Assembly (NCBI GenBank): GCA_001179505.1 | Contig: CDMY01001000.1 | Span: 124,001 to 188,000 of the forward strand | Direction of reading: 5' to 3' | Length of the DNA: 64,000 nt | Source: Vitrella brassicaformis CCMP3155 | Lineage: Eukaryota > Protista > Chromerida | Shown: piece after piece, positions 7,886-62,606 of the stretch | Layout of the letters: each line of letters starts with the position of its first letter | How positions within the stretch are numbered: the first letter of the stretch is position 1 | Notes under the pieces: model-generated | Told to the model about the DNA's origin: nothing | Database searches by the model: none | The model's input: the letters and a program-made list of their open reading frames with translations, nothing else | Translations under genes and position numbers: made by a program

Positions 7886-8573
7886 CTACCATATGCTGAC
7901 CAAACGCAGCTCAATGTAGGGGGGATCATACGTGGGTAAGCCGCCATAATACCTGATGTTTGGCGCTTTGATCTGCCTCATCTCCCCCTCACGCATAGAC
8001 AGCATCGCCTCACGACACCACCCAAACAGATCAGACACACGACACACCTGCCGACGGCCATCGTAGACCTTGTCACGGCCGTCGAATCCATCACGCCACT
8101 CAACCCGGTCGAACGTGACGTGGTCGCTGGCCCTGGGCACTCTGCCGGTGCCCTCTTCCACCACCTCATACCTCTCACCCCCTGGCAATGTGCCAGTCCG
8201 ACGGCGTAGAGTGGCGCCGCCGCCAATGAAGGGACTGTCAACGACGCACACACACACAGAGAGAGAGAGAGCGCGCAGACACAAAGCCAATCACCATCCA
8301 CGCACGAGGCATGAGCAAGAGAGACGCAAGGGCTCCTCACCTCTGGTTGTTCGGTAGCCTTTGCCCTATCGGCAGGGCAGTGGGCGGGCTGGTGCTGAAG
8401 TCGAGGAAGCGGACGCCCTTATTGCCCTCTGCCAGCCGGGTCACAATCACCTCGCCACTCAGAGGGCTCGTGACTTCGATGAACAGCTCGCCCGGCCGAT
8501 TGGGGTACTCAAAGACGTTCTTCTCGCCCCACACAGTGATGCCCACCCACCCGAGGCCAGCTGCCAACGCCAT
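7886..8573 (-). CDS. YPNRPGE orphan domain + FKBP-like domain (2 exons: 8573-8341, 8234-7886)
   Basis: MALAAGLGWVGITVWG..FEYPNRPGE..PNNQ ag|gtgagg, phase-2 intron, then cag|t SPFIGGG..YEVVEEGTGRVP..WRDGFDG..MREGE..LRLVSIW*. The join is in frame. Confidence 0.8.
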
Positions 8574-9156
8574 GATGCCTGCTGTGATACCTGTCACAGA
8601 GTCTGGATAATCCATCAGATCTCTCTCTCGTTTGCAATCTGCACGTGTGCTGCCTCTCTGTGGCTCACCCTGTGTGCTCACCCTCCTTTCCCGTTTTGCC
8701 GCAGAAACACTTCCGATCGGCAGCTGAGCTCGCAGGCAACGGGGTGAAACAGACAGACAACGACTAGGGGCGTTCGCCGACAGGCCGCTTTTCCTTGCGG
8801 CGCGAGCAACTTTGGCCCGAGATCTTCGCATACCTCACCCACCTTCCCTGAGCCATTGTGGGCGATGCCGCAGCAATCCGCTCTACTTCTTCCCGCGGGA
8901 GTCATCGTCTCGGCGTTGGCCAGCACGTTTCAATCTCCCCTGGTGGCTCGCCCGCTCGAGGCCGTCACTCCAATCCATTCCACAGCCCGTGGGAAGGCCA
9001 CACATTACCTCTCACAGCCCATTGCGGCCCAGACGGGCAATCAGGGGCAAAGCCAAGACTCTCACACTCAATTGGACGCCGAAAAGGTCAATCAAAATGA
9101 ATGATCAAAAGACCTGCTCAGCCTTCTGAATATGCTCTCCCTGTGTGTTGTCGCAG

Positions 9157-9780
9157 AGCTCTGGCAAGGACGAGCGGAACACGTCCGAGCCATCAGACAG
9201 CACCTTGCCGTCGAGTGGTCCTCTTCCCCCAACCGATGGTCAGAAAGGTCGTCAGCCACAACACGAGTGCAAGAGCATCCCTCTCTGTGGGTTTGCGTGT
9301 GTGTGTGTGGGCTGGTTGCAGGTGCTCCTCTGCAAGTCATGAACTTCATCAACTACGGAGACGAGCAAGTCGCTGAGAAGTGGCTGGGGGTTCCTTTCCG
9401 CCGAGCTTCTGCCACCCCTGGTCAGTCAGCGAACCAGTGATAGCGAGGCGGAAATGAGATCACCCCACCCACATGTCTGTATCGCTGTGCACCCGGTCCA
9501 TGCAGCTCCCAGCGAAGGCCCCCCTCCAATCACAATCACTGGACTGGAGACTCCAGTGGAGCGCATTTCCAAGGGCGTTTCCAATGGCGGCCTGGGCTTT
9601 CTGGTAGGGGCCATCGGCTTGTCCATCGGGATCATCTTCTGTGGTTTTGGCCTCGTCCTCTTCGGCCTTAATCAGGCCGGCATCAATGGTGTGGGTGCGA
9701 TCATCGCCGCACTCGCATTCTTGGGTGTGGCCTTGGGTGTGGCGTTTGTCCTGGTGATGATGTTAAAATCACTGGGGTAG
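9157..9780 (+). CDS. Small membrane protein with two C-terminal hydrophobic helices (start unresolved)
   Basis: Three phase-1-compatible exons (~9157-9240, 9320-9420, 9505-9780) ending GLGFLVGAIGLSIGIIFCGFGLVLFG..IIAALAFLGVALGVAFVLVMMLKSLG*. Confidence 0.55.
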
Positions 9781-10184
9781 GCACCACGGCGTCGTGACAC
9801 ACCGTACGTGTGAGACAGCTAGACAGACAGGTGCTTAGAGGGGGGGAAGGGCTGGTGGGGGCGACTATCTCCCTTGTACAGACATACGGTTTTGCTTACT
9901 TGACTCATGGGACTGTCTCATGGGAGGGAGGGAGGGAGGGAGGGGAGAGGAGAGGCAGCGGGTGTGTAACGTCTGGTACTCTCTTGGGGCTCGGATTCCA
10001 CTGGCTGACGTCGTTTCTGTCTGTGAGTGTCGACAGGCAGAAAACACGTCAGCCGATCGACACCCTGAGCCGCGAGAGACCACATAGACACACCTGCATT
10101 GAGTGGCTGGGCGGGCAAGGCAAGTGACCAGTGCGTCTGAATGAGGGAGGGTATCATGATGTCGTGATGCATGTGGCGGGTGGG

Positions 10185-10507
10185 CGGTGTGGTCCGTCGG
10201 CCGGAGATCAACGGCCTGGAGGGCAGGGTGGGGGAGGTCCTGCCGCCACACACACAACTCAACAAATCGGACGTCACACGGTGGGGGTCACACGCAGACG
10301 AAAGTGGTTACACAGACAGGCCCGCATGTGTCTGTCTGTCTGTCTGTTTGTCTGTGTGTGTGTGTGTGCAGGTACCGTGTTAGTCTGTCAGTGTGCGCCA
10401 CACACGAGCTGTCACTGCGTGGCGACAATGTGCTGCGGATTCCCCGGGCTGCGCGCGACCCGCTGAGCCACCTGGTGGCCTCACTCACCGGCATGCACAT
10501 CAACTGA
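10185..10507 (+). CDS. 3' exons of a gene with an RPEINGLEGRV motif; paralog of the tail of the RING gene at 58570-59850
   Basis: VVRRPEINGLEGRVGEVLPPHTQLNKSDVTR | YRVSLSVCATHELSLRGDNVLRIPRAARDPLSHLVASLTGMHIN* is near-identical to 58570-58893 (-). No RING exons found upstream here. Confidence 0.55.
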
Positions 10508-11658: not shown

Positions 11659-12277
11659 CTACTCTATGCTGACCAGCCGGAGCTGCCAGTAGGGGACACA
11701 TTTCTCGTCGGGCACTGTGATCTGCCTGACCTCCCCCTCACGCATCGACAGCATCGCCTCACGCCACCACCCACCATAATCAGACACACATCCACCTCCC
11801 TACGTTCATCGAAGGCTTTGTCCCGGCCATCGAATGCATCCTTCCACGCAATGATGTCGAACTTGACGGTGTCGCTGGCCTTGGGCACTCTGCCGGTGCC
11901 CTCCTGCACCACTCGATGGCGGGCGCCGGAGGGAAGTCGGACAAAGCCATTGCCGTTGCGGTTGGCGACTGACGATGAGCCCTCTTGCCGCTGACGCAGT
12001 GTGGCCCCGCCGCCATTGCTGCCAGCCGCTGCTGCACTGCACACACAGATTTGGTGCAGACACAGCACAAAGAGATCTGATCTGTGTGATGGCCTCTGCC
12101 CCTCGTCGCCTACGTGAGCTGTCTGAGGTCGTCTGTGATGTCGGCCGCCAGTTTGATGTCGCCGTAGTGCTCCGGGCGGATGGCCATCTGCTGCCCTTTG
12201 GCCGTGTAGTAGAAGCCGCCGCGGCCGTCGGTGAAGGTGTTGCGGCCCCAAAACAGGCCGACCAGCCGATCACTCAT
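11659..12277 (-). pseudogene. MSDR micro-domain + FKBP-like domain with a 1-nt frameshift
   Basis: Exon 1 MSDRLVGLFWGRNTFTDGRGGFYYTAKGQQMAIRP..QL ac|gt, phase 2, then the FKBP exon. The frame is lost after DERREV (~11795) and resumes WWREAMLSMREGEVRQI..QLRLVSIE*. Confidence 0.8.
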
Positions 12278-12776
12278 CGCGACGAGAGGCTGCTGATGAT
12301 CCCACTGCACAAATACAGAGGACACAGACAGAGCGATGAATGAGAGAGAGATCTGTCACTGCATCGATCTGTAATGCTTCTTTGTTGACCTCTCGAGTGT
12401 TTGTCTGCCCACAGGCCGATGGATTACCGATGGCCGGCAATGCCCTCTTGCCTGAGCACATCAACATGCACCACGGGAGAGGGACACAGAAAATGAGTTT
12501 GCGGCCCAGATCTTCGTTATTTTCGGTTGCCTGAGGCCTCCCTGACCCACCTGATGGGAGAAATGATGCCAAACAGTTCCGCGGGAGGATCTGCGAGCTT
12601 AGATGACGGTCAACTCTGGAGGATTGAAGGAGCATTGAAGGCGACCAAGGACACAGACAGCCCACAGGGTGAGCCACAGAGAGGCAGCACACGTGTAGAC
12701 TGCAGAAAAGAGCGAGATCTGATGCCTTGTGTATTGCCTCTTTGTGTGTTCTTGTGTGAGTCTGTAGGCATCCGTC

Positions 12777-13846
12777 ATGGCCTTGGTGGCTCCCGGCCGC
12801 AGGTGGGTCGGATCCACGGTGTGGGGCGACGGGCGGGTGTACGAGTACCCCAATCGGCCGGGCGAGTACGTCTATGACGAGCGGCGCCCATCTGACGGAA
12901 GCCTCATGGAGGTCCGCATCGCCAATCCCCGGGGGCGCGTGGCCTTCTTCGACTTCAACACCAATCCGCCGACACTGCTGCCGTTGACGCAACGACCACC
13001 GAACAATCAGATGTAGGCAAGAAGCACACCTCCTTCTCACTTATTCCTGGCATTGTGTCGGCTTTGTGTCTGTTCGTTTGTGTGTGTCATCGGCAGTCTC
13101 GCCAATGGCGGTGGCTCCACTCTGCGCCGTCGAGTGGGCGCACTGCCATCATCTGGCTTGGGAGGCTACCCGAGGTGAGGAGCCCCTTGCCTCTCTCTTG
13201 CTTTCGTGTGGATGGTCATCGGCTTTGTGTCTGTGTGTGCAGTGCAGCGGCGGTTGGCGGCGGCAATGGCGTCGGCAATGGCGTCGGTGCCACACTGCGT
13301 CAGCGGCAGGAGAGCTCATCGCCACAGCAGCCGCCGGCCAATCGCAGCAGTGTCGGCCGTCGGACCGGCACACTACCATCGTCTGGCTGGCGATATGAGG
13401 TGGTGGAGGAGGGCACCGGCAGAGTGCCCACACTCAATGACTGCGTCAAGATTGACTGGATTGCGTGGCGTGATGGATTCGACGGCCGGGACATACGCGA
13501 CGATGTCCGTGGGAAGGTGATCCGTGTGTCTGATTGGCCTGAGTGGGAGCGTGAGGCGGTGCTGTCGATGCGGGTGGGCGAGATTAGGCGAATCAAACTG
13601 CCAAATGACTATTTTGCCCCCTACGTTCAGCTGCGTTTGGTCAGCTCTATCGTTCAGCTGCGTTTGGTCAGCATAAAGCAGAAGAGAGTCCACACACACA
13701 CACACACGGGGGGGCGCCTGTGTGTGTCGCACACTCATGTGTGTGGCCTGTCTCTTCTTAATTGTCTGTCTCTGTGCTTGGGTTTCGAACCAAGGAGTGA
13801 GAGTGTCGTGACTCAGCCGTGGCAGTATACATGTGTGTGTCGTTGA
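12777..13846 (+). CDS. YPNRPGE orphan domain + mini-exon + FKBP-like domain, with stop read-through
   Basis: Exons 12777-13012, 13097-13174 and 13243-end, all joined in phase 2. The usual SIE-TAG end is mutated to ata aag cag, extending the ORF to 13846. Confidence 0.75.
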
Positions 13847-14108
13847 ATGTGCAACATGTTTGCCAGGCAGCAAGAAGGGGGATGTCTGTGTGGGTGTCCC
13901 CTCTCTCCCTCACCGTCTGTCTGTCTGCTATGAGTGGGGAGTGCGTGTCGTCTGAGTAGCCGCTTTGTTTATCGGTCGGCCGGTTACTCACAGTCTCTCT
14001 CTCTCTCTCTCTCGGTGTGTCGGTGTGTGTGTATGTGTGTGTCCAAAAGGGAGGTTGATTCTTTCGATGTCTGTGTGTGTCTGCCTTATTCACTCTTTTC
14101 GCTCTCAG

Positions 14109-14408
14109 ATGTCACGTCATAGACGAAGATCACCGTATGGCTACCGATATGAGGTGGTGCAGGAGGGCTACGGCAGAGTGCCGACACGCAACGACGCCGT
14201 CAAGATCGACGAGATTTGGTGTCGTGATGCATTCGATGGCCAGGACAAGTTCATCGATCGCCGTGGGTATGTGAGTCCTGTGGGTGCTCGGGATGGGTGG
14301 GCTCGTGCGGCGGTGCTGTCGATGCGGGAGGGAGAGGTCAGGCAGATCATACTGCCACCCGGATACAGTGCCCCCTTTTATCAGATGCGTTTGATCAGCA
14401 TAGAGTAG
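14109..14408 (+). CDS. Stand-alone FKBP-like exon (99 aa, MSRHRRRSPYGYRYEVVQEGYG...MRLISIE)
   Basis: Intact family-type domain. The ATG directly follows a cag acceptor, so it could instead be an orphaned terminal exon. Confidence 0.65.
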   Translation: MSRHRRRSPYGYRYEVVQEGYGRVPTRNDAVKIDEIWCRDAFDGQDKFIDRRGYVSPVGARDGWARAAVLSMREGEVRQIILPPGYSAPFYQMRLISIE

Positions 14409-14409
14409 G

Positions 14410-16290: not shown

Positions 16291-16293
16291 CTC

Positions 16294-16713
16294 CTACTCC
16301 ATGCTGACCACACGGAGCTGCCAGTAGGGGGCAGGTTCGTCTGGCGCTATGATCTGCCTGAGCTCCCCCTCTCTCATCTGCGCCAACGCCTCACGCTCCC
16401 ACCCACCCCGCGGCCAATCAAGCACACATTTCACCACCCCACGGAAATCGAAGTCTTTGTCCTGGCCGTCGAATGCGTCGCGCCACGAAATCCAGTCGTA
16501 CTTGATGCGCAAATTGTTGATGCGATCCATGAGTCTGGGCAGTCTGCCGGTGCCCTCCTGCACGACCTTGTGGTATGCGCCACTGGGATACAGCTTGAAG
16601 CCATCAGGAATGTTGATGCCGCTGCTATCCTCATAGACGAAATGGCCGTCCAGCAGCCCGACGACGCGGTCACCATCGCAATTGACGTACTTCTTCTTGC
16701 CGCCACCCGTCGC
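16294..16713 (-). CDS. Terminal exon: TOP2-tail peptide + partial MSDR motif + FKBP-like domain
   Basis: cag|ATGGGKKKYVNC-DGDRVVGLLDGHFVYED-SSGINIPDGFKLYPSGAYHKVVQEGTG..QLRVVSME*. Phase 0, in frame with the upstream TOP2 exon ending RPRRAAAQ|gt. Confidence 0.75.
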   Translation of the reverse strand, partial: ATGGGKKKYVNCDGDRVVGLLDGHFVYEDSSGINIPDGFKLYPSGAYHKVVQEGTGRLPRLMDRINNLRIKYDWISWRDAFDGQDKDFDFRGVVKCVLDWPRGGWEREALAQMREGELRQIIAPDEPAPYWQLRVVSME

Positions 16714-16789
16714 CTGCACAGCGAAGGGCCGTAGTGTGTGAGCTGTCGATGAGGGCGTAGTGTGTCTTATGTATCAGGCAGGTACCTGG

Positions 16790-17398: not shown

Positions 17399-17433
<35 letters not shown>

Positions 17434-17559: not shown

Positions 17560-17594
<35 letters not shown>

Positions 17595-19138: not shown

Positions 19139-19170
<32 letters not shown>

Positions 19171-20269: not shown

Positions 20270-20415
20270 GACCTCTGCTGTGCTGCGGCCGATGAGTGAT
20301 CTGCCAAAATGACTTCTGATCTCGGTCAAGCGAACCACTCAGCTCACTATCGATACGCCTCAGCCGTGAGTTGACGCCGCTGTTTTCTCACCTTCGGCGT
20401 CAAGCTCGCACCACC
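20270..20415. promoter_or_regulatory. Conserved element of the divergent-gene cassette, copy A
   Basis: ~150 bp gatgagtgatctgccaaa..ggtcaagc..ccactcagctcactatc plus stem-loop gagttgacgccg-N15-cggcgtcaagctc. Found in four head-to-head intergenic regions. Confidence 0.6.
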
Positions 20416-20573
20416 CGGTGAAGGGGCAGAGAGGAAAGAAAAGGGAAGAGAGAAGAGTCATCAGGTCGGATAGACAAAGCAAAAACAATACAGAAACACA
20501 CAGGTCCGTTCACTTCGGTGTCTGTCTGTGTGTGGTTCAGGGACTGCCGGTGAGAGATCTGTTGCCTGTGACG

Positions 20574-22201
20574 ATGGAGGCCGAGTTGGCCGCTCGCCAG
20601 TTCAGCGCCCATGCGATTCTCAATGAGCTGCACGTGCCCGTGACGGCCATCGGTGACGCCATCAGCCAGCTGCACACACAGATCCGCCAGGCTGACGAGG
20701 ACGCCCAGCGAGAGCGGCAGCACCACGGCGCATCGGACCCCTCGGCGGCCTCGCCTGACGACACTTTGCTGCTGAATGTGGGCGGACATCTGATGAGCGT
20801 CAGGTGGCAGCACATGACTCAGGGAGAGGGGGTGGAGGGCACTCTGCTGGCGGCCCTCTTCGGGGGCTGCTGGGAGGGCCGACTCATCAAGGACGACAGC
20901 CAGCGGGTGTTCGTCGACATCTGCCCGGAGGCCTTCAAGGCCGTCCACAAGGCCATACTCAACGCCGAGACCCTTCGCAGCGCCGGCAAGGCGGCGTCGG
21001 TCGGCCATCTGCTCAATGAAGTGGCCAAGCGCGACAAGGGTGAGGGCAATGAAGGCCATGACACACTTTTCGTTTCGTCATACTCATTTGGCTGTCTGTG
21101 TGGTTTGCCTGTCGCAGGTCGCCATGGCTTCTGGGTCAAGCTGTTGACGACGCCTCTCGACAAGGATGTCACAGAGGGCACCGGCAGTGCCGATAGTGTG
21201 CCCACCGGGTCGCTGACAAGCAGCCCCACCGAGGCGGCGGCCGCCCTCAAGGCGATGGAGGCCATCCTCAAAGCCTTCGCCAATGAGAAGGCCCGGCTGG
21301 AGGGACAGCTGCGGGCCGCCAACACACGACGCGACAATCTCGACAAAGAGATAAAGGTGACCACATGCAGAGAGGGAGAGGAAGCAAGAGGCTGTTGGTC
21401 TGATGGTTGTGTGTGTGTGTGTGTGTCAGGCCGTCGAGCCCTTTCTGCTGCCTCTGAGTGGCGGCGATGCCATTCGGTCGGTCGAGGTGTGTGGACAGCT
21501 CATCTCGACCACTCAGTCCACTGTGGACGAAATGGGCGACATCGCACTCAGCCACCGATTTGACCTGTGAGCCCACCACACCAACACACAGAGGACACAC
21601 ACCGATGTGCTTCTCACTGTTTGTGTGCCGTCAGGTGGTCCAGCAGCCGGGCGGTGGAGGTGGTCGATCCCGACCACATCGGCCGCATGGTCGACTTCTA
21701 CCGCAGAAAGCGACTCGGCGCCTCGCCCGCCGACATGGCCGCCGTGCTGACGATGGCTGGCGAGACGGACCAGGCGCCATTTGACGTCAACGCGGCCATG
21801 TACGGCATCGTCAAGACGGACACACCGACACTACAGGCCAGGTGAAGCCCAACAGGGAGCCGACTGCAGCAATTGGCCATCTTGGTTTTGTCCATGTCAG
21901 TGTCGGCCGTCGCACCGGCACACTGCCATCGTCTGGCTATCCATATGAGGTGGTGCAGGAGGGCACCGGCAGAGTGCCCACAATCAATGACCGCGTCAAG
22001 TTCGACCGCGCTGAGTGGCGTGATGCTTTCGACGGCCAGAACAAAGCATACGATTACCGTGGGGCGGTGTATCGTGTGTCTGATCTGTATGGGTGGCTGC
22101 GTGAGTTGTTTCTGTCGATGAGGGAGGGGGAGGTCAGACACATCAAAGTGCCAGACGGACCTGAACCCTACCGTGAGCTGCGTTTGATCAGCATAGAGTA
22201 G
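20574..22201 (+). CDS. Tandem BTB/POZ (KCTD/T1-like) + coiled coil + FKBP-like protein, intact
   Basis: Exons 20574-21039, 21118-21356, 21430-21566, 21635-21841 and 21901-22201 join in frame. TLLLNVGGHLMSV..LLAALF..RVFVDICPEAF is BTB; SVEVCGQLISTTQSTV..LSHRF..DPDHIGRMVDFYR is a second BTB-like domain. A 59-nt phase-2 intron precedes the FKBP exon. Confidence 0.85.
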
Positions 22202-23947: not shown

Positions 23948-24611
23948 CTACTCTATGCTGATCAACCGCAGCTGATAGTAGCGGCCGAAGTATCCGGCTG
24001 GCAGTAAGATTTGCCTGACCTCCCCCACACTCATCGACAGCAGCGCCTCCTGGAACAACGCACCCCGATCAGACACACGACACACCACCCGACGGTTATC
24101 GTATGGCTGTGCCACCCACCCACGGTAATCGTAGGCTTTGTTGTGGCCGTCGAATGCGTCGCGCCACGAAATCCAGTCGAACTTGACGGTGTCGGTGAGT
24201 GTGGGCACTCTGCCGGTGCCGCGCTGCACTACCTTGTGGTATGCGCCACTTGGATAGCGCATGAAGTTGTCAGGAATGTTGCCATTGCTGGCCGCATCTC
24301 CTCCTCCCCCCGCTGCAGCCGCGGCTGCTGCCGGCTGCTGTGGCCCGTTGTGATCGTCCTGACGGCGTCGCTTGGTACTGACAGATGGCCTGACACACAG
24401 AATGGCATACCAAGTCAGAAATGCCCAACACGACTGTGTGCGGCTCAGTCGCTCACTGGTGGTGTTTGAAGCAGAACTTGACATCTCTGTTGAATGACGG
24501 GTGAGAGATGGCCACTCGCTGCCCTCTGACGTCCATCTCATAGCCGCCATGGCCGTCCTCATAGACAAAATGACCACCGAACTCAAACACCTCCACGAGG
24601 CGGTCACTCAT
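23948..24611 (-). CDS. MSDR micro-domain + FKBP-like protein, intact
   Basis: MSDRLVEVFEFGGHFVYEDGHGGYEMDVRGQRVAISHP..KHH ca|gtgagc, phase 2, then cag|g PSVSTKRRRQ..YPSGAYHKVVQRGTG..QLRLISIE*. Confidence 0.85.
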
Positions 24612-28090: not shown

Positions 28091-28736
28091 CTACTCTATG
28101 CTGACCAAACGCACCTCAACGTAGCGGACTAACCATCCGGGTGGCGTTATGATTCGCCTAACCTCCCCCACCCTCATCGACAGCAACGCCTCGCGCAACC
28201 ACTCACCCCGATCAGACACACTAGACACCGCCCCACGCTTATCGATGACTTTGTCCTGGCCGTCGAATGCATCAGCCCACCCGACGTGGTCGAACTTGAC
28301 GCGGTCGGTGGCCTTGGGCACTCTGCCCGTGCCGAGAGCGAGGACCTTGTGGTATGCGCCACTTGGATAGCGCATGAAGTCATCAGGGATGTTGCCATTG
28401 TTGCCATTGCTGACCGCCGCTCCCCCGCCCACTGCTGCAGCCGCTGCTGCTGCGGCTGCTGCTGCTGGCCCGTTGTGGTCGTCTTGACGGCGGCGCTTGG
28501 CACCACCGACAGACGGCCTGACACACAAAAGGGCAGCGAGTCAGTCAGTCAGAGTGCAACACACCTGTGTGTGGCTCGGCCGCTCACTCGTGGTGGTGTT
28601 CGAAGCAGAACTTGATGTGCGAATGGAAGGAAGGCTTGATGGCCACCCGCTGCCCCGTGACGTCCGCCTCATAGCCGCCATGGCCGTCCTCATAAACGGC
28701 ACAGCCGTCCAGCAGTCCGACAACACGGTCACCCAT
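28091..28736 (-). CDS. MSDR micro-domain + FKBP-like protein, intact
   Basis: MGDRVVGLLDGCAVYEDGHGGYEADVTGQRVAIKPSFHSHIKFCFEHHH ga|gtgagc, phase 2, then PSVGGAKRRRQ..EVRLVSIE*. Confidence 0.85.
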
Positions 28737-29120: not shown

Positions 29121-30747
29121 ATGGAGGCCGAGTTGGCCGCTCGCCAGTTCAGCGCCCATGCGATTCTCAATGAGCTGCACGTGCCCGTGACGGCCATCGG
29201 TGACGCCATCAGCCAGCTGCACGCACAGATCCGCCAGGCTGACGAGGACGCCCAGCGAGAGCGGCAGCACCACGGCGCATCGGACCCCTCGGCGGCCTCG
29301 CCTGACGACACTTTGCTGCTGAATGTGGGCGGCCATCTGATGAGCGTCAGGCGGCACCACATGACTCAGGGAGAGGGGGTGGAGGGCACTCGGCTGGCGG
29401 CCCTCTTCGGGGGCTGCTGGGAGGACCGACTCGTCAAGGACGACAGCCAGCGGGTGTTCGTCGACATCTGCCCAAAGGCCTTCAAGGCCATCCACAAGGC
29501 CATCCTCAATGCGGAGACCCTTCGCAGCGCCGGCAAAGCGGCGTCGGTCGGCCATCTGCTCAATGAAGTGGCCAAGCGCGACAAGGGTGAGGGCAATGAA
29601 GGCGATGACACAGTCTTCTTGTGTCGTCATTCCGTCTTTGGCTGTCTGTGTGGTGTGTGTGTCGCAGGCCGCCACGGCTTCTGGGTCAAGCTAATGATGA
29701 CGCCTCTCGACAAGGATGCCACGGAAGCCGCTGATTCTTCACCTGCCGATAGTGTGCCCACCGGATCGCTGACCAACAGCCCCACCGAGGCGGCGGCCGC
29801 CCTCAAGGCGATGGAGGACATCGTCAAGTCATTCGCCAACGAGAAGGCCCGGCTAGAGCGGCAGCTGCGGGCCGCCAACACACGACGCGACAATCTCGAC
29901 AAAGAGATTCAGGTGACGACATGAGCAGAGAGGGAGGGAAATGTCTATTGGTCTGATGGTTGTGGCTGTGTGTGTGTCTCTCAGGCCGTCGAGCCCTTTC
30001 TGCTGCCTCTGAGTGGCGGCGATGCCATTCGGTCGGTCGAGGTGTGTGGACAGCTCATCTCGACCACTCAGTCCACTGTGGACGAAATGGGCGACATCGC
30101 ACTCAGCCACCGATTTGACCTGTGAGCCCATCACACCAACACACAAACGACACACACTGATGTGCTTCTCACTGTTTGTGTGCCGTCAGGTGGTCCAGCA
30201 GCCGGGCGGTGGAGGTGGTCGATCGCGACCACATCGGCCGCATGGTCGACTACTACCGCAGAAAGCGACTCGGCGCCTCGCCCGCCGACATGGCCGCCGT
30301 GCTGACGATGGCTGGCGAGACAGATCAGGAGCCATTTGACGTCAACGCGGCCATGTACGGCCTTGTCAGGACCGACACACCCACACCGCAGGCCAGGTAA
30401 AGCCCAACAGGGAGCAGACGGCAGCAATTGGCCATCTTGGTTCCGTTCTTCTCAGTGTGGCCCCTCGGACCGGCACACTGCCATCGTCTGGCTGTCGATA
30501 TGAGGTGGTGCAGGAGGGCACCGGCAGAGTGCCCACAGGGGAGGACCGCATCAAGATCGACATCGTCTACTGGCGTGATGCATTCGAAGGCCAGGACAAA
30601 AGCTGGGAACGCCGTGGCTGGGTGACTGGTGTGTCTGATCGGCCTGTGTGGTTGCATGAAGCATTGCTGTCGATGCGGACGGGAGAGACTAGGCGAATCA
30701 AATTGTCACCCACGTATGTTCAGCTGCGTTTGATCAGCATAGAGTAG
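29121..30747 (+). CDS. Tandem BTB + FKBP-like protein, second intact copy
   Basis: Same five-exon structure as 20574-22201. ag|gtaaag at 30396, cag|t at 30456, then VAPRTGTLPSSG..QLRLISIE*. Confidence 0.85.
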
Positions 30748-47761: not shown

Positions 47762-47960
47762 CTACTCTATGCTGATCAACCGCAGCTGACGGTAGGGGCA
47801 CCAAGAGTCGTCTGGCAGTTTGATTTGTCTGACTTCCCCCTCCCGCATCTCCAGAAACGCCCCACGCTGCCACGCACCCCAATCAGACATACGACCCACC
47901 CGCCCACGGACATCGTATGCTTTGACCCGGCCGTCGAAGTCATCCCGCCACCCAATCCAG
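47762..47960 (-). pseudogene. 5'-truncated FKBP-like fragment
   Basis: WIGWRDDFDGRVKAYDVRGRVGRMSDWGAWQRGAFLEMREGEVRQIKLPDDSWCPYRQLRLISIE*; the N-terminal half is replaced by non-coding repeat sequence. Confidence 0.8.
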
Positions 47961-48286: not shown

Positions 48287-48385
48287 CTACTCTATGCTGC
48301 TCAAGCGCAGCTGATTGTAGGGGACAACAAATCCGTCTGGCAGTTTGATTCGCCTCACTTCGCCCTCCCTTCGGCCTGATAAGAA
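48287..48385 (-). pseudogene. Shorter 5'-truncated FKBP-like fragment
   Basis: REGEVRRIKLPDGFVVPYNQLRLSSIE*; abuts 3'-flank sequence homologous to 30840-30970. Confidence 0.75.
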
Positions 48386-48620
48386 TGCGCCCTTCTTTAT
48401 GTGTGCCCACACACCCCTGCCCTTGCACACGCTGGACAATTCACGACACATCCACGCATAGAGAGTCATATGGCTGACAAAAATCACAACGCATTTCCTC
48501 TTCGCCACTCAGATCTCAGACACACAGTCAGCCAGACACCGAGTGAAGAGCCCCCGGCCACACGCATGAGTGTGTGACACACACAGCTGCCCACTACTGT
48601 GTGTGTGTGTGCACTCTCTC

Positions 48621-50458
48621 TTACTCTATGCCGATCAACCGCAGCTGACGGTAGGGGGCACCAACGCCTCAGTTTGATTTGCCTGACTTCCCCCTCCCGC
48701 ATCGACAGGATCGCTTCATCCAACCACTCATTCCGAAAATCAGACACACGATACACCAGCCCACGGTTATCGCAGTTTTTTTTCCTGGCCGTCGAATGCA
48801 TCATTCCACCAAATCCAGTCGATCTCGACGGTGTCGTTGTCTGTGGGCACTCTGCCGGTGCCCTCCTGCACCACCTCATATCGATAGCCATACGATGGCG
48901 ATGTGCCAGTCCGGCGGCCGACAGTGCTGCGATTGGCCGGCTGCCGCTGTGACGATGAGGAGCCCTCCTGCCGCTGACGGACTGTGGCACCACCACCATT
49001 GCCGCCGCCAGCCGCTGCTGCGCTGCACACAGAGAGCAGACACAACGCCAATCACGAGAGAGAGGTAAGGGCTGCTCACCTCAAGTAGCCTCCCCAGCCA
49101 GACGATGGCAGTGTGCCGGTCCGAGGCGCCACACTGAGAAGAACGGAACAAAGATGGCCAATTGGTGCATCTGCTGGCCCTGTTGGGCTTTACCTGGCCT
49201 GTGGTGTCGGTGTGTCGGTCTTGGCAATGCCGTACATGGCCGCATTGACGTCAAATGGCGCCTGATCCGTCTCGCTAGCCATCGTCAGCACCGCAGCCAT
49301 GTCGGCGGGCGAGGCGCCGAGTCGCTTTCTGCGGTAGTAGTCGACCATGCGGCCGATGTGGTCGGGATCGACCACCTCCACCGCCCGGCTGCTGGACCAC
49401 CTGACGGCACACAAACAGTGAGAAGCACATCAGTGTGTGTCGTTGTGTGTTGGTGTGATGGGCTCACAGGTCAAATCGATTGGCCAGTGCGATGTCGCCC
49501 ATTTCGTCCACAGTGGACTGAGTGGTCGAGGTGAGCTGTCCGCACACCTCGACCGACCGAATGGCATCGCCGCCACTCAGAGGCAGCAGAAAGGGCTCGA
49601 CGGCCTGACACACACAGCCACAACCATCAGACCAACAGACATTTCCCTCTCTCTCTGCTCATAATCATGTCGTCACCTGAATCTCTTTGTCGAGATTGTC
49701 GCGTCGTGTGTTGGCGGCCCGCAGCTGCCGCTCTAGCCGGGCCTTTTCCTTGGCAAAGGCTTTGACGATGGCCTCCATCGCCTTGAGGGCGGCGGCCGCC
49801 TCGGTGCGGCTGTTAGTCAGCGACCCGGTGGGCACTCCATCGGCGCGTGAAGAATCAGCGGCATCCTTGTCGAGAGGCGTCATCATCAGTTTGACCCAGA
49901 AGCCATGGCGACCTGCAACAGACACACCACACAGGCAGCCAAAGGAAGAATGACGACACAAGGAGACTGTGTCATCGCCTTCATTGCCCTCACCCTTGTC
50001 GCGCTTGGCCACTTCATCGAGCAGATGGCCGACCGACGCCGCCTTGCCGGCGCTGCGAAGGGTCTCCGCATTGAGGATGGCCTTGTGGACGGCCTTGAAG
50101 CCTCCGGGCAGATGTCGACGAACACCCGCTGGCTGTCGTCTTTGACGAGTCGGCCCTCCCAGCAGCCCCCGAAGAGGGCCGCCAGTAGAGTGCCCTCCAC
50201 TCCCTCTCCCTGAGTCACGTGCTGCCGCCTGACGCTCATCAGATGGCCGCCCACATTCAGCAGCAAAGTGTCGTCAGGGGAGGCCGCCGAGGGGTCCGAT
50301 GCGCCGTGCTGCTGCCTCTCTCGCTGGGCGTCCTCGTCAGCCTGGCGGATCTGTGTGTGCAGCTGGCTGATGGCGTCACCGATGGCCGTCACGGGCACGT
50401 GCAGCTCATTGAGAATCGCATGGGCGCTGAACCGCCGAGCGGCCAACTCGCCCTCCAT
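48621..50458 (-). pseudogene. Third BTB-BTB-FKBP gene, frameshifted
   Basis: 1-nt deletion at ~50100 (gaggcttc vs gaggccttc), mini-exon 49133-49080, and an FKBP exon with frameshifts at the A-run ~48780 and at ~48655. Confidence 0.85.
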
Positions 50459-51019
50459 CCACAGGGCAACAGATCTCTCTCAGAGGCAGTGCCTGAACCA
50501 CACAGACAGACACAGACAGACAGACAGACCGATGTGAACGGATCTGCGCGTTTTTTGATTGCCATCGGTTCGCTTGTCCCACCTGAGGCTCTCCAAGGCG
50601 AAAGGACGTGCCGTCACCGTCTTCAAGTTGCGAGACTCTTCTTCGCGATCGGATTCTCTGCAGGAATACCGCTATTCGTTGCATCATTTGGCGCTTCGAG
50701 GACGTCCGGTGGGAGTGAGGAGAAGTAAGGGATCGAGGAAAAATTCAGATCATTCATCCCACCTTGTGTGGTCTGCGTGTGTGTCCTTCAAGGCGAGAGG
50801 CGGTCTCTCTGTGCGCGTGTGCGTGTGATGTGTGTGCCCGTGTGTTCGCCAAGCGGATTGGCGGCTCTTGGCAAACTTGAAGGCATCAGGTGAGTCACTC
50901 TCCCGACCCGTGATGGATGTGTTGTGCAGTTCCAAACTATCGGCAACAGATGCAGTTATGCCACGTGTTATGCCAGGCCGCCTGTGGCTTGGAGAAACGA
51001 CGGCTTCCTTCTTGCCAGC

Positions 51020-51252: not shown

Positions 51253-51645
51253 ATGAGTGACCACCGTGGTGTCGGACTGCTGGACGGCCATTTCGTCTAT
51301 GAGGACGGCAGTGACGGCTACGAAATGGACGTCAAGGGGCAGCGGGTGGCCATCAAGCCTTCGTTCCATTCGCACATCAAATTCTGCTTCGAACACCACG
51401 ACGAGAGAGCGGCTGAGCCACACACAGGTGTGCTGCAGCCTGCCTTGTTGCCCTTTTGTGTGTCAGGCCATCTGGCGCTTCCAAGCGCCGCCGTCAGGAC
51501 CAGCACAACGGGCCACCACCACCACCAGCAGTAGCAGCGGCAGGCATTCCTGACGGCTTCAGTGTGTCGCCATCTGGTGTGCGATATCGCATCTTCGTTC
51601 TCGGCACCGGCAGGATGCCAACTTTAGCCGACCAGACCATATACG
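51253..51645 (+). pseudogene. MSDR micro-domain + 3'-truncated FKBP-like gene
   Basis: MSDHRGVGLLDGHFVYEDGSDGYEMDVKGQRVAIKP..; the donor is mutated (ga|gagagc) and the FKBP exon stops after GTGRMPTLADQTIY. Confidence 0.75.
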
Positions 51646-56262: not shown

Positions 56263-57383
56263 GGGTCCCAATCAGCCCGTTTGTTGAGTGCTTCCACTGG
56301 CGATGATGATGCATCGCGGTGTGTGGTGTGCATCCATGAGTACGACACACACACGGGTGCCGCACACACGCCCCTCGTACTCGGCCAATGCGGTACGTAC
56401 GGGGGCAAGGATGGTTGGCCGAGACACACACATAGTTTTGCGTATTCCATCGCATCCATGTGTGTGTCTTGTGTTGTGTTGGTGTGTGAAGGTCACACCT
56501 TCTGTGCCCACGTGAGCCGGCAGACAGACAGACAGACAGACAGACAGACTGCAGCGAGAATGTCTTTGTTCTTCATGACGTGTTGGTTTGTTTCATTCAG
56601 TGTGTAGCGCGCATAAAAGGACTCGACGGCAGCGTCAAGTGTCCCACGTGCAGGTGAGTGGGCATGTGTGAAGGTCATGAGCAATCCTGACCCATTCATC
56701 TCTCCCTCTCTCTCTCCCTCTCTCTGTTTCTCAGGGCTGTAAGTCGGGAGGATGTCATCAAGAAGAACAACGCACTCGTCACCCTCCTCGAGTACATGCG
56801 GCCATCTGACGGCACCGCTGGACGGCAGCAGCAGGCCGGTAATGCGACCACCACCACCACCACCGCAGCAGCAGCAGCAGCAGGGCACGTCAGCAGCAGG
56901 GTCGCCACCACACCACATGGAGCACGGCAGACCAGCAGGTAAGGCTCGCCAGAGAGCAGAGGAGCACTGAACACAGTTGATCTCGCCATCTGTCCTTTTT
57001 GTTCGTACAGCAATGGCGCCACACTCCGTCAGCGGCAGGAGGGCTCCTCACTGTCACAGCAGCAGCCGGCCAACAGCAGCAGTGTCGGCCGTCGGACGGG
57101 CACATCGCGGTATGGCTACCGATATGAGGTGGTGCAGGAGGGCACCGGCAGAGTGCCCACACTTTTCGACACCGTCAAGATCGACCGGATTGCGTGGGAT
57201 GATGGATTCGACGGCCAGCGCAAAGCATGCGATGTCCATGGGGAGGTGATTCGGGTGTCTGGTCGGGGTGAGTGGAAGCGTGAGGCGTTGCTGGCGATGC
57301 GTGAGGGCGAGATTAGGCGAATCACAGCGCCACCCAGATATCCTGCCCGCTTCCGTCAGCTGCGGTTGATCAGCATAGAGTAG
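56263..57383 (+). CDS. RING-finger + FKBP-like protein (5' end unresolved)
   Basis: Spliced CVVCIHEY..PLVLGQCG|HTFCAH|CVARIKGLDGSVKCPTCR|AVSREDVIKKNNALVTLLEY..TS ag|gtaagg, phase 2, then cag|c NGATLRQRQ..FKBP exon 57011-57383. Confidence 0.85.
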
Positions 57384-59850: not shown

Positions 59851-60104
59851 GGGATGCCTTCCTCCTTCCGACGTATGAGTTATCTATGCCCCAACCCAAC
59901 TCTGGTGGTCTATGCGTCACACACCAGCTGCACATGCACACACACGGCCAACAATACCTATGAATGCATTGTGCGCATTTCTCTCCACTGCACGTCCTGG
60001 CGACCATTTGCGAGCTTGAAATCCCCTAGGGCACACGGTGAAACCGCCATCTTGCGTGAGATCTGAGGCTTGTTTCTGTTTCCTTTCTCGTCCTTTTCCC
60101 TTCA

Positions 60105-61094
60105 ATGAGTCGGCAGTTGTCAGTTCCCCATGTGGTGCAGCGGTTCTTCAATCCTGCTCTCTCCTCCTCCACCACGGAGGAGGACGATGACACAGTCACC
60201 AACGAGATGGTTCAGGGGGTGCTGGCGGACCACCAGGACACCAAGCAGCAGCTCCTCGCCACACAGAAGCAGCTGATTGACGAGCTGACGAGAGAGAGGG
60301 ACGATTGGAAGAGGCGCTGTGAACGTGCCGAGGCGAAGCTGACCGAGTTCCAGGCACGTTGCGGCTACTTTGGGGCTCATCAGGATAGTGTGCTGACTGT
60401 ACTGAGCGCGAGAGATCACGCGCAGCTGATCGAGTGGCTCGGCGGCGACAGGACGCTCGTCCAGCTATACAAGTAAGGCACACCAGCACCGCGATGTCCA
60501 GGCGGTGTTTCTTCATCAACCGTTCTCTCCCTTTGTGTGTGTACTTGTTTCTTTCTCAGGGCCACGCGTGATGGTGGGATGTATGGGAGCCTGCTGGACA
60601 GAGTGGGCGGTGCGCGTGGCCTCCTGTTCATCATCCGCGTCGGGTCACTTCGATTCGGTGCCTATATGAGCGGAGGCATCGACGTGCCCGACACCAATCG
60701 CCCTTGCGACGTATGGTTCTTTTCCCTCACTGGCCATGATTTCAGCGGCCCCACAAAGATCCCTTTGCGGCACAAAAACAATCAGATGGTCAGTATCGCC
60801 GCTAGGGATGGAGCACTCGAGAGCAGAACCGGTGAAAACAAGGCCAGAATGTGCATTGGTGGTGGGGGGATTCTGTGGCTGGGGTATGGCGATAATGATG
60901 CCCCTGCTGCGGACATTCGAAGGATTCAACACTGGGTGCACAAGGATGATGTGCCAGCGGGTTATACAGGGATGCGGGCTGCCGTCGCTGAGATATCGAG
61001 CTCCCAATGCGGCTTCCTGGGCAGCAACGAGCTCTTCACTGCTGAAGAGCTGGAAGTGTGGCATGTGGTTAGACTACATTTTGAGAGTGAATAG
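60105..61094 (+). CDS. Coiled-coil + TLDc domain protein (2 exons: 60105-60472, 60561-61094)
   Basis: LIEWLGG..LYK|ATRDG..LFIIR..RFGAY..VWFFSL..FLG..FTAEELEVW is the TLDc signature; phase-2 join. Confidence 0.85.
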
Positions 61095-61501
61095 GCTTGT
61101 TTCTCTCTGCGTGCATCGGTCCGCGTTCGTCTGAGTGCTTCTGCACTGTGTCAGTTTTGTTATTTATACCGTGACGTGTTGACAGTGACGAGATTACCAT
61201 GAAGCTGCATACATGTGTGCGGCATGACCATAGAAAGGCAGACTCTCCTGTGTGTGTGTGTAAGTGTGCGATTTCTCGTGGATCATGGATCTGTGCGATT
61301 CATCCTTAGCCGACCAATAATACACAGGCATGTCTCACAACCAAGGGGCTCTCCCCGAAACCGCTGCCTTGAGGGGCAGCCGATAGGTGAGCGAACGAGA
61401 AGCGCATTGTGGAGCAGATCCCAAGGCCACATCGTCCCCACCGACGCTCCCGTTCGTGTGGCGTGTGTGGAGCAGATCTCGGCTGTGTGCATGAGAGTCT
61501 C

Positions 61502-62606
61502 ATGACGGCTCTTCCACTGGCACAGTGTGGCGTGTGTTTTGAGGACTACCACCACGAGGATACCGACAGGCAGCCTCAGGTGCTGTCGCGATGCGGTGAG
61601 TGAGGAACACACACAGGCAGTCAAGCAAAGGTTCTGAAAAGGAGGGAGGGGTGTTCTTTTGTATGTGTTTCATGCGCCCACCCATCCGTCTGTCAGGTCA
61701 CTCGTTCTGCGCGGCGGTACACACACACGACAGGCAGACAGACAGACGGCTTTCATATCTAAATGAGGGGCTCGTGCGTGTTTGGTCGCTGTCCGTCTGT
61801 TGTGTGTCTGCAGTGTGTCCGGGGCCTCATTCGCAACCATCCTCATGACCGCCGCGCGGCTGTCTGCCCAATCTGCAAGCACGCCAACCAACCAACCAAC
61901 CACTGTGCTCACAACTGTGTATGTGCATTTCTGTCAATCAGGCGAGAGACTTCACAGTCTGATGTGCACATCAACTACGACCTCCGTGACATCGTGCAGC
62001 AGCTGCGGACGGCCACTGCGGCAGCACCGGCACCGGCACCCAGCAACACGACACACTCGACACCCCCTGCTGTCCCTCCGACTGGCCAAGAAGCACCCCT
62101 CACGGCTCGCCAGCGGCAGGAGGCCGCCGACTATGCCTTAGCGCTGCAGCTGTCCAACGAAATCAATGACACAGACCCGCCGAGCAATCAGACGTGAGCA
62201 GCCCCTGCCTCTCTGCCTTACTAACCTCAATCAGGATGGTCGTTGGCTTTGCGTCTGTTCTGTGTATGTGTGTGTCGTTGGCAGTCCCTTCATTGGCGGC
62301 GGCGCTCCTCTCCGTCGTCGGACCGGCACACTGCCATCGTCTGGCTATCCATATGAGGTGGTGCAGGAGGGCACCGGCAGAGTGCCCACACTCAACGACC
62401 GCGTGAAGTACGACCGGATCTGGTGGGGTGATGCATTCGACGGTCGGGACAAAGTCTACGATGACCGTGGGCGGGTGTGGCGTGTGTATGATCGGTATTA
62501 CTGGTTGAATGAGGCGTTGCTGGAGATGAGGGTGGGGGAGGTCAGGCAGATCACAATGCCATACGGCGCCCCCTACCGTCAGTTGCGTTTGGTCAGCATA
62601 GAGTAG
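61502..62606 (+). CDS. RING-finger + FKBP-like protein
   Basis: CGVCFEDY..PQVLSRCG|HSFCAA|CVRGL..CPICK..INYDLRDIVQQL..NQ ac|gtgagc, phase 2, then cag|t PFIGGG..FKBP exon 62285-62606. RING intron positions match 56263-57383. Confidence 0.87.

What the first reader, a model, noticed from the sequence alone, without database searches (positions are those of the whole stretch)
7886..62606. Plug-in FKBP-like exon fused to ubiquitin-ligase modules: a candidate diversified substrate-receptor family
Seen: 16 copies or fragments of one ~90-aa terminal exon (Y.V..EG.G..P...D.V..D...W.D.FDG..K..D.RG.V..VSD...W..E..LSM..GE.R.I..P...Y..LRL.SIE*). Wherever a separate upstream exon joins it by splicing, the intron is phase 2 and in frame. 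The partners differ: BTB-BTB (20574, 29121, 50458), RING (56263, 61502), MSDR micro-domain (12277, 24611, 28736, 34852, and 51253 where the donor is dead) and YPNRPGE domain (8573, 12777). The TOP2 chimera is the exception: the fusion lies inside a phase-0 exon. The same intron 5' sequence (gtgag[c/g]agccc.t..ctctct) precedes the exon at 8340, 13175, 49079 and 62194, so intron and exon move together. Established: BTB domains recruit Cullin-3, RING domains bind E2s, and the exon pattern follows the Mip/FkpA-type FKBP fold. Inference: the FKBP-like domain is a swappable substrate-recognition head for both CRL3 and single-chain RING ligases, expanded like F-box or NLR arrays, while the non-E3 versions may be decoys or adaptors. 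I know of no described BTB-FKBP/RING-FKBP family like this.
Basis: partly seen in the sequence, partly recalled or inferred. Interest (0 to 1): 0.92.

Follow-up and report, generated by a model that had tools for sequence, protein, structure and literature searches.

The report
Hypervariable FKBP-fold terminal exon family
The alga Vitrella brassicaformis carries a large family of one exon encoding a degenerate FKBP-fold domain, spliced onto ubiquitin-ligase and other partners, whose former ligand-pocket positions vary far more than neutral drift predicts, which suggests a new kind of diversified recognition domain.

Summary
The window (Vitrella brassicaformis CCMP3155) carries 16 copies or fragments of one exon of about 95 codons, plus one remnant of its 3' flank. 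Ten terminal introns checked are all phase 2. Four junctions are seen in RNA: 21841|21901, 62193|62285, 13012|13097 and 13174|13241. The exon encodes a true FKBP-superfamily fold (pLDDT 93.6; TM 0.75 to Legionella Mip; hhalign 99.1% to algal FKBPs). It has lost the 80s loop and most pocket residues, so it is probably not an isomerase.

New here: in near-identical duplicated genes the flanks are 90-100% identical but the exon core is only 50-75% identical. For genes A and B, dN/dS is 0.32 in the BTB part and 1.04 in the exon. Twenty codons are frozen. Twenty-six are more diverged than any of 200 neutral simulations, and six of ten alignable pocket-equivalent positions are among them.

The RING domains are real. 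One KCTD-type BTB is supported; the "second BTB" is not. Most family members have no E3 partner, so the substrate-receptor idea is plausible only for the BTB and RING subsets and is untested.

First-stage readers of this scan noted the same cassette family on other pieces of this genome. I found no paper describing it.

The parts
7886..8573 (-). YPNRPGE-domain gene. Exon 8573-8341, phase-2 intron with donor GTGAGGAGCCC at 8340, cassette exon 8234-7886 (type A, begins SPFIGGGATLRRRTGT).
   Evidence: The only in-frame GT..AG join is 8341/8234, phase 2.
11662..12635 (-). MSDR-type gene (annotated CEM38796.1 = P0049). The cassette exon from 12036 (type B, long linker) has a broken frame; the annotation bridges the break with an intron at 11774-11683.
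12767..13846 (+). YPNRPGE-domain gene. Exon 12767-13012, micro-exon 13097-13174 (a truncated cassette start), intron with donor GTGAGGAGCCCC at 13175, then type-B cassette from 13241. Its stop is lost and the ORF runs on to 13846.
   Evidence: Transcript contig L008 is 100% identical and spliced exactly so.
14088..14408 (+). Second cassette in tandem, preceded by an AG acceptor. It lies unspliced in the 3' part of transcript L008. It was called as a 113-aa ORF (P0011) whose first residues translate the polypyrimidine tract.
16294..16719 (-). One exon or ORF carrying an MSDR-like motif (DRVVGLLDGHFVYED) directly followed by the cassette, with no intron between.
   Evidence: Upstream there is only a weak GHKL hit.
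20309..22201 (+). Gene A (CEM38800.1 = P0154, 479 aa): coiled coil, KCTD-type BTB, long helix, unknown conserved domain, then FKBP-like cassette exon 21901-22201.
   Evidence: The exon model reproduces P0154 exactly. Joints 21566|21635 and 21841|21901 are seen in runs X1 and X8. BTB profile hits.
23948..24611 (-). MSDR-type gene (CEM38801.1 = P0012, 198 aa). Exon 24611-24457, phase-2 intron, cassette exon 24389-23948.
28091..28736 (-). MSDR-type gene, paralogue of the previous one. Join 28588/28517, phase 2, donor GTGAGC.
29121..30747 (+). Gene B, BTB-FKBP paralogue of gene A. Cassette exon about 30456-30747.
34852..35433 (+). MSDR-type gene. Join 34997/35079, phase 2. Cassette exon 35079-35433.
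47762..47956 (-). Partial cassette (3' two-thirds) with stop and conserved 3' flank.
48287..48421 (-). Cassette fragment (last ~27-44 codons) with stop and 3' flank.
48621..50687 (-). Gene C (CEM38816.1 = P0156), the third BTB paralogue. Its own cassette start survives only as micro-exon 49133-49080. A GTGAGCAGCCC intron follows, then a type-B cassette (49022-48621) broken by a frameshift in an A-run near 48785.
51253..51632 (+). MSDR-type remnant. The donor GT is lost. The cassette is truncated after about 20 codons, some 300 nt before the assembly gap.
56263..57383 (+). RING gene (CEM38818.1 = P0009, 261 aa): complete C3HC4 RING. Last intron 56939-57010, phase 2. Type-B cassette exon 57011-57383.
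61502..62606 (+). RING gene (CEM38821.1 = P0187). Last intron 62194-62284, phase 2, donor GTGAGCAGCCCC. Type-A cassette exon 62285-62606.
   Evidence: Transcript L010 is 100% identical across the junction. Pfam RING. Model.
703..836 (-). Remnant of the cassette's last codons plus the conserved 3' flank. No domain is left.

Best explanation
This is a Vitrella-specific family of catalytically degenerate FKBP-fold domains.

Each domain is encoded by one self-contained 3' module. The module comprises a phase-2 splice acceptor, a low-complexity linker, about 95 domain codons ending ...SIE-stop, and a conserved 3' flank of about 110-130 nt.

DNA-level recombination has placed the module, together with its intron, behind several unrelated partners: a KCTD-type BTB protein, RING fingers, two small lineage-specific domains, and a topoisomerase-II-like tail. 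Elsewhere in the genome the partners include SET, HMG and CBM20. The fused genes then multiplied by segmental duplication.

The domain keeps a frozen scaffold. About a quarter of its codons, including positions equivalent to the FKBP ligand pocket, change faster than synonymous sites and are reshuffled between copies.

The most likely function is a diversified peptide- or ligand-binding head. On BTB and RING partners it would be the substrate-recognition part of ubiquitin ligases.

Shown: the copies, the splicing, the fold, homology to FKBPs, loss of pocket residues, the divergence hotspot, and the contrast in selection. Inferred: binding function, Cul3 or E2 recruitment, and substrates.
For: Fold and homology:
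- AF2 pLDDT 93.6.
- Foldseek best hits are LpMIP and FKBPs, TM 0.75, E=8.6e-6.
- Exon profile against PDB, E=4.7e-4. Full-length profile, E=2.3e-6.
- hhalign against canonical algal FKBPs: 99.1%, E=8e-19.

Degenerate pocket:
- The 80s loop is absent.
- The position equivalent to Y26 is variable.
- Only the W59 equivalent and an F/D pair are kept.

Module and movement:
- All copies share homology from the domain start to +50..+130 past the stop.
- The same intron sits behind unrelated exons, with homology starting about 15 nt before the donor.
- A nested micro-exon structure occurs at 13097-13174 and 49133-49080.

Selection:
- Flanks are 90-100% identical while the exon core is 50-75% identical, in three independent duplicate pairs.
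- BTB part: dN 0.036, dS 0.114, omega 0.32. Exon of the same pair: dN 0.287, dS 0.274, omega 1.04.
- Median omega over 55 pairs is 1.05, yet 11 copies keep intact ORFs.
- 20 codons have pN about 0.008. 26 codons have pooled pN 0.58 against pS 0.32.
- In 200 neutral simulations at most 19 codons (mean 9.8) exceeded the cut-off, and the top-26 mean pN never passed 0.42.
- 6 of 10 alignable pocket-equivalent positions fall in the fast class, hypergeometric P=0.03.
- The PHI test indicates recombination, p=0.0115.

E3 partners:
- RING Pfam hits are above threshold.
- The BTB profile hits only KCTD/T1-type BTBs, including Cul3 adaptors.
- About 30 full-length BTB-FKBP paralogues exist, with complete transcript ORFs.

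Expression.
Against: - Most family members have no recognisable E3 domain. Partners such as SET, HMG and CBM20 do not fit a ligase-receptor model.
- The selection analysis is crude: pairwise Nei-Gojobori counts, classes chosen after the fact, and a JC simulation on a tree distorted by recombination.
- Elevated dS in the exon shows that part of the divergence comes from exchange between old copies, not from new mutations.
- The mapping of variable codons to the pocket rests on sequence alignment. That alignment is uncertain between positions 49 and 64. I had no model coordinates to check clustering in 3D.
- 5 of the 16 copies in the window are broken or partial, so part of the family is decaying.
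Confidence: 0.55

Rival explanations
1. A neutral or selfish 3'-exon module. The cassette (acceptor, exon, stop, 3' flank) spreads by segmental duplication and ectopic recombination and traps upstream genes. The variable positions are simply unconstrained surface, and there is no diversified recognition function.
For: The module carries everything needed to terminate a host transcript. Five of 16 copies are broken or partial. Overall omega is about 1. Orphan tandem copies lie behind genes. Partners are heterogeneous.
Against: Twenty codons are nearly invariant although their synonymous divergence is normal. Eleven copies keep intact ORFs at dS about 0.3. The fast class exceeds every neutral simulation. 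The partner domains are under purifying selection. Homology boundaries differ between copies, with no fixed element ends.
Confidence: 0.15
2. A common-function FKBP module. The conserved face (W39, D41, F43, D44, G45, K48, R53, G54, E77, R79) binds one shared partner or ligand, or acts as a chaperone or oligomerisation unit. It brings many different proteins to the same place or regulator. Variability elsewhere would be secondary.
For: There is a strongly conserved set of charged and aromatic residues. The partners are functionally unrelated. FKBP domains are known as docking and chaperone modules (established knowledge).
Against: This does not explain why the exon core is a divergence hotspot inside near-identical genes. 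It also does not explain why pocket-equivalent positions are the most variable.
Confidence: 0.15
3. Combinatorial use of cassettes at the RNA level. One upstream gene is joined to different cassettes by alternative or trans-splicing, giving a repertoire from few genes.
For: Three transcript contigs share the RING 61502 exons but end in three different cassettes: L010 (own), L009 (gene B's, 31 kb away) and L001. MMETSP 'isoforms' P0168-P0170 share an N-terminus but differ in the head. Elsewhere, cassettes are phase 2-2 internal exons, and two occur in one transcript ORF.
Against: In L009 and L001 the switch lies about 33 nt or more inside the exon, within sequence shared by the copies, not at the splice junction. 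That is what short-read assembly chimeras look like. L008 shows the second tandem cassette unspliced.
Confidence: 0.08
4. An artefact of assembly or annotation: collapsed or chimeric repeats called as genes.
For: Read depth is zero over the variable core 21996-22163 in four runs while its flanks are covered. The annotated model CEM38798.1 disagrees with transcript L008. Two assembly gaps with poly-G edges lie in the window.
Against: Transcript contigs L008 and L010 match the window at 100% over 1.5 kb and 3.5 kb, including two cassettes. The core of the 23948 cassette is covered without mismatch in all four runs. The fold prediction is very confident.
Confidence: 0.03

Closest known systems
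MATH-BTB (and F-box) substrate-adaptor expansions in nematodes and grasses
   Same: A conserved E3-recruiting domain is joined to a less conserved substrate-binding domain. The expansions are lineage-specific and tandem, and the binding domain evolves fast (PMC6883508 and PMC4091423 for the family and its expansion; positive selection in the MATH cleft is from my own knowledge of Thomas 2006).
   Different: The variable head here is an FKBP fold at the C-terminus of a KCTD-type BTB, not a MATH domain. The same head also sits on RING, SET, HMG and non-E3 partners. It is one mobile exon with its own intron and 3' flank.
Exon shuffling of LRR/TPR exons in candidate pathogen receptors of brown algae (Zambounis et al. 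2012, PMC3341825; ROCO genes, PMC11378527)
   Same: An alga with a lineage-specific receptor-like family. One structural unit corresponds to one exon of fixed phase. Units are shuffled between paralogues, with signs of diversifying selection.
   Different: There the shuffled units are repeats inside one receptor scaffold (NB-ARC/ROCO). Here a whole globular domain is a terminal exon moved between unrelated genes. I took only titles and abstracts from these papers.
Canonical Mip/FkpA-type and algal 'YTGWLDGFD' FKBPs
   Same: Same fold and clear profile homology. The motifs GxxYxVxxEGxG, W.D.F, the helix Trp, M..GE.R.I and the C-terminal strand are shared.
   Different: The 80s loop (Y82, H87, I90/I91) is deleted and about 7 residues are lost between the F36 and W59 equivalents. 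The Y26 and F99 equivalents are hypervariable; the alignment there is uncertain, and F46 either falls in the deleted stretch or aligns with hypervariable position 57. Single sequences fail the Pfam FKBP_C threshold. Isomerase activity is unlikely.
KCTD family Cul3 adaptors (e.g. BACURD/KCTD10, SHKBP1)
   Same: The first conserved domain of the BTB genes matches only T1/KCTD-type BTB domains in the PDB. As in KCTDs, the variable C-terminal domain would give specificity.
   Different: There is an extra long helix and an unknown conserved domain of about 110 aa between the BTB and the head. Cul3 binding is untested. Pfam BTB_2 is below threshold for the window's own proteins.

Membership tests
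FKBP superfamily (fold and homology) | Five-stranded antiparallel sheet wrapped round a short helix (FKBP fold) | tested here: met
   AF2 pLDDT 93.6. All top Foldseek PDB hits are FKBP/Mip, TM 0.70-0.75.
FKBP superfamily (fold and homology) | Significant profile similarity to canonical FKBP domains | tested here: met
   hhalign 99.1%, E=8e-19, 42% identity over 76 columns. hmmsearch against PDB, E=4.7e-4 and 2.3e-6.
FKBP superfamily (fold and homology) | Single sequence passes the Pfam FKBP_C gathering score (21.1 bits) | tested here: not met
   Best scores are 15.4 and 12.6 bits. Six of eight copies give no hit.
Active FKBP peptidyl-prolyl isomerase | Conserved pocket residues (FKBP12 Y26, F36, D37, F46, V55, I56, W59, Y82, F99) and the 80s loop | tested here: not met
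   By alignment only the W59 equivalent (W65) and an aromatic-Asp pair are kept. The Y26 and F99 equivalents are hypervariable. The region around F46 is deleted or variable. The 80s loop is deleted.
Active FKBP peptidyl-prolyl isomerase | Measured isomerase activity or FK506/rapamycin binding | not testable with these tools
   Needs a protein assay.
KCTD/T1-type BTB Cul3 adaptors | BTB (T1-type) domain | tested here: met
   Profile A8 hits only BTB chains: Kelch13 3.4e-5, SHKBP1 2.8e-4, BACURD3 6.5e-4, KCTD16/7/9. For single sequences Pfam BTB_2 is below threshold (P0153 15.5 bits against 21.4).
   Profile A7 (P0154 residues 262-372) has no BTB hit in the PDB. hhalign against the first BTB gives probability 0.2%. 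The AF2 model there is of low confidence.
KCTD/T1-type BTB Cul3 adaptors | Binding to Cullin-3 | not testable with these tools
   Needs pull-down or co-expression.
RING-type E3 ligases | Complete C3HC4 cross-brace of eight zinc ligands | tested here: met
   P0009 and P0155 show C-x2-C...C-x-H-x2-C-x2-C...C-x2-C. Pfam zf-RING_UBOX scores 33.3 bits (cut-off 25.2) and zf-RING_5 scores 31.8/31.2 (cut-off 27.9).
RING-type E3 ligases | E2 binding and ubiquitin transfer | not testable with these tools
   Needs an in vitro ubiquitylation assay.
Diversified E3 substrate-adaptor family (MATH-BTB / F-box type) | E3-recruiting part under purifying selection and recognition part evolving at omega of 1 or more | tested here: met
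   Omega 0.28-0.32 in the BTB part against 1.04 in the exon of the same genes. The fast class exceeds the neutral simulations. The methods are crude.
Transposable element carrying an exon | Fixed element ends shared by all copies (terminal repeats, target duplications) | tested here: not met
   Upstream homology ends at different points in different partner classes (-190 to -514), and downstream homology ends anywhere from +20 to +900. Breakpoints lie in shared sequence, as in homologous recombination. I made no dedicated search for terminal repeats or target-site duplications.

The most novel reading that the evidence does not exclude
The cassettes form an innate-immune-like recognition repertoire of a chromerid alga. 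The FKBP fold would serve as a hypervariable binding scaffold, kept diverse by gene conversion between clustered copies and by modular phase-2 splicing (arrays, alternative last exons). It would be coupled to Cul3 and RING ligases that destroy whatever the head binds, for example viral or bacterial proteins in the coral holobiont.
Probability: 0.15. Interest if true: 0.9.

Novelty: new variant of a known kind. Interest (0 to 1): 0.78.

Why it matters
Fast-evolving, lineage-specific ubiquitin-ligase adaptors are known, but always with MATH, F-box-associated, LRR, SPRY and similar heads. Here a prolyl-isomerase fold appears to have been turned into the variable head. It is packaged as a single portable exon with its own intron, stop and 3' flank.

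If the binding function holds, it adds a new natural binding scaffold: about 95 residues, no disulfides, and a confidently predicted fold.

It would also be a clear eukaryotic example of whole-domain exon shuffling caught with its breakpoints. And it gives a first candidate for a diversified recognition system in the closest photosynthetic relatives of apicomplexan parasites.

The proteins are in public databases only as 'uncharacterized', 'peptidylprolyl isomerase' or 'BTB domain-containing'. The genome paper does not mention them.

Tried and rejected
- Pfam on single exon peptides: essentially blank. Profiles were needed.
- The search for related loci and a degenerate DNA pattern on metagenome contigs: no Vitrella transcript contigs in that collection.
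- First read laying on 5.8 kb: swamped by repeat joints, no intron information. A narrow stretch worked.
- Full-length AF2 of P0154: only pLDDT 64. Foldseek saw only the FKBP part, so it gave no structural test of the BTB or of the middle domain.
- Second 'BTB': rejected.
- ESM Atlas look-alikes for the MSDR and YPNRPGE N-terminal domains: only sub-threshold bacterial hypotheticals, no lead. Pfam was also blank.
- Transcript 'isoforms' joining the RING gene to distant cassettes (L001, L009): rejected as evidence of alternative or trans-splicing, because the switch is inside the shared 5' part of the exon.
- Transposon model: no fixed ends.
- Literature: no paper on Vitrella FKBP, BTB or RING expansions in the searchable library.
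- I could not map variable sites in 3D because model coordinates are not exposed.

Full report
ORGANISM AND OBSERVATION

The window is from Vitrella brassicaformis CCMP3155. Its proteins are the GenBank CEM388xx series on a 227,604-bp contig.

A tblastn census with four copies as queries finds 15 copies or fragments of the exon on both strands. A 16th, truncated start lies at 51465-51632. A remnant of the 3' flank alone lies at 703-836. The two assembly gaps touch none of these features or their junctions.

GENE MODELS AND SPLICING

The annotated proteins P0154, P0156, P0012, P0009 and P0049 can be reproduced exactly from GT..AG exon models. Single in-frame joins exist for the genes at 8573, 28736 and 34852. 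In all ten cases the intron before the cassette is phase 2.

RNA evidence:
- Logan contigs of two RNA-like runs carry the joints 21566|21635 and 21841|21901. There is no depth in the introns.
- JGI transcript contig L010 matches 60063-64000 at 100% with introns removed, including 62193|62285.
- L008 matches the 12777 gene at 100%, with junctions 13012|13097 and 13174|13241. It then runs unspliced through the second tandem cassette to 14418.
- About 30 full-length BTB-FKBP paralogues exist in the species. Several are complete transcript ORFs (alignment A4).

WHAT THE EXON ENCODES

Single peptides barely touch Pfam FKBP_C. A profile of 12 copies does better:
- It hits Legionella Mip at E=4.7e-4.
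- The AF2 model is very confident (pLDDT 93.6).
- All best PDB matches are Mip or FKBP domains, TM up to 0.75.
- hhalign against canonical algal FKBPs of the 'YTGWLDGFD' type gives 99.1%, E=8e-19.

So this is a derived FKBP. It is about 15 residues shorter than the canonical domain: the 80s loop is gone and about 7 residues are missing before the helix. Of the canonical pocket, only the helix Trp (W65) and an aromatic-Asp pair persist. I infer that isomerase activity is lost.

PARTNERS

- Both RINGs are complete C3HC4 fingers above Pfam cut-offs.
- The first conserved domain of the BTB genes matches only T1/KCTD-type BTB chains, several of them Cul3 adaptors.
- The second conserved region has no BTB signal.
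- The MSDR and YPNRPGE N-terminal domains have no recognisable relatives.
- In a census of 60 cluster representatives, RING (2), BTB_2 (2), HMG (1) and SET (1) are minorities, and most have nothing recognisable. A CBM20 partner is known only from a source's name for one further member.
- All 30 members whose source I looked up are from Vitrella or from its transcriptomes.

THE MODULE AND HOW IT MOVES

All copies share homology from the domain start to 50-130 nt past the stop. This is a conserved 3' flank with a CA-run / GT-run pair.

The intron 5' end GTGAG[C/G]AGCCC recurs behind unrelated exons. In the RING 61502 gene, homology to the YPNRPGE genes begins only about 15 nt before that donor. 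This marks a DNA-level breakpoint inside the upstream exon.

In gene C and in the 12777 gene, the first ~13-25 codons of one cassette survive as a micro-exon. They are followed by this intron and a second cassette type. The join lies in sequence shared by all cassettes, as expected for homologous recombination.

Acceptor positions differ between partner classes. There were therefore several fusion events, but far fewer than 16. The BTB, RING and MSDR genes are whole-gene paralogues.

Elsewhere in the genome the cassettes form arrays of phase 2-2 internal exons. Their donor (TG|GTGAGT) reads as a TGA stop if unspliced. One transcript ORF holds two domains.

THE NEW RESULT: A DIVERGENCE HOTSPOT

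Genes A, B and C are about 95% identical through exons and 85% through introns, up to the first ~60-100 nt of the cassette. Identity then falls to 50-75% and recovers at the last codons. Two other duplicate pairs show the same pattern, with 90-100% identical downstream flanks.

Selection measures:
- For A against B, the BTB part has dN 0.036, dS 0.114, omega 0.32. The cassette has dN 0.287, dS 0.274, omega 1.04.
- Over 55 pairs of intact copies the median omega is 1.05.
- Per codon, 20 positions are almost frozen (pN 0.008 at pS 0.19). Another 26 have pooled pN 0.58 at pS 0.32.
- In neutral simulations on a dS tree, on average 9.8 and at most 19 of 70 codons passed the same cut-off. The top-26 mean pN never exceeded 0.42.
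- Variable and fixed positions alternate along the strands.
- Six of ten alignable pocket-equivalent positions (36, 49, 50, 55, 57, 90) are in the fast class, P=0.03.
- The raised dS and a PHI test (p=0.0115) show that exchange between copies contributes as well.

Caveats: the classes were chosen after the fact, the methods are pairwise, and the alignment between positions 49 and 64 is uncertain.

INTERPRETATION

The data fit a diversified binding head on a fixed FKBP scaffold. The exon-level shuffling resembles that of brown-algal candidate receptors (PMC3341825).

That idea does not cover the majority of partners, and nothing here tests ligase function. The rivals are listed with their odds: a neutral or selfish module, a common docking function, RNA-level combinatorics, and artefact.

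The transcript contigs that join the RING gene to distant cassettes (L001, L009) switch inside the shared part of the exon. They are best read as assembly chimeras.

UNEXPLAINED

No contig of four runs covers the variable core 21996-22163 of gene A's cassette, although its flanks and the core of the 23948 cassette are covered. This may be a tool filter, a strain difference or an assembly problem.

NOVELTY

The proteins are deposited but undescribed. The genome paper has no word on FKBP, BTB, RING or ubiquitin, and four other literature searches found nothing.

First-stage readers of this scan noted the same cassette family on other pieces of this genome. Those notes are unchecked. I tested here only what concerns this window, plus one array locus.

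Noticed in passing
window 21996-22163: Contig depth is zero over the variable core of gene A's cassette in all four runs laid (RNA-like and DNA-like). The conserved exon ends have very high depth, and the core of the 23948 cassette is covered without mismatch. This could be a tool filter, a strain polymorphism or an assembly chimera.
   Followed up: partly
window 12767-14418 / L008: The annotated protein CEM38798.1 (P0186, 326 aa) splices from the middle of cassette 13241-13651 into cassette 14088-14408. Transcript contig L008 shows this stretch unspliced, with an ORF that reads through a lost stop to 13846.
   Followed up: partly
window 22780-23370; also 6884-7204 and 15111-15715: A block of about 600 nt, 91-92% identical, lies a few hundred bases downstream of three different cassettes. 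In the read laying it has many-fold higher depth than single-copy sequence, so it is a dispersed repeat of unknown nature that travels with some cassettes.
   Followed up: partly
window 15530-15830 vs about 23100-23400: About 300 nt are 98-100% identical between the regions downstream of cassettes 16294 and 23948, while the cassette cores are 36-66% identical. This points to very recent duplication or gene conversion that spares the core.
   Followed up: partly
L007:3001-5913 (contig CDMY01000748.1): Annotated six-domain protein P0001. Each cassette is an internal exon with phase-2 introns on both sides. The donor TG|GTGAGT yields a TGA stop immediately if the intron is retained. The N-terminus looks like a signal peptide followed by an MSDR-like domain.
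   Followed up: partly
window 61597-61813 / L010, L001: The transcript contigs of the RING 61502 gene carry about 20 extra codons (KHANQPTNHC...) between the RING and the next exon, compared with the annotated CEM38821.1. The same contigs also run on from the upstream gene at 60063-61386.
   Followed up: no
window 51920-51937 and 52238-52252: The second assembly gap is flanked on both sides by G-runs of about 15-18 nt, so the join there is doubtful.
   Followed up: no
window 703-836 (-): Remnant of the last cassette codons plus the conserved 3' flank, with no domain left. It lies outside the finding's coordinates.
   Followed up: yes
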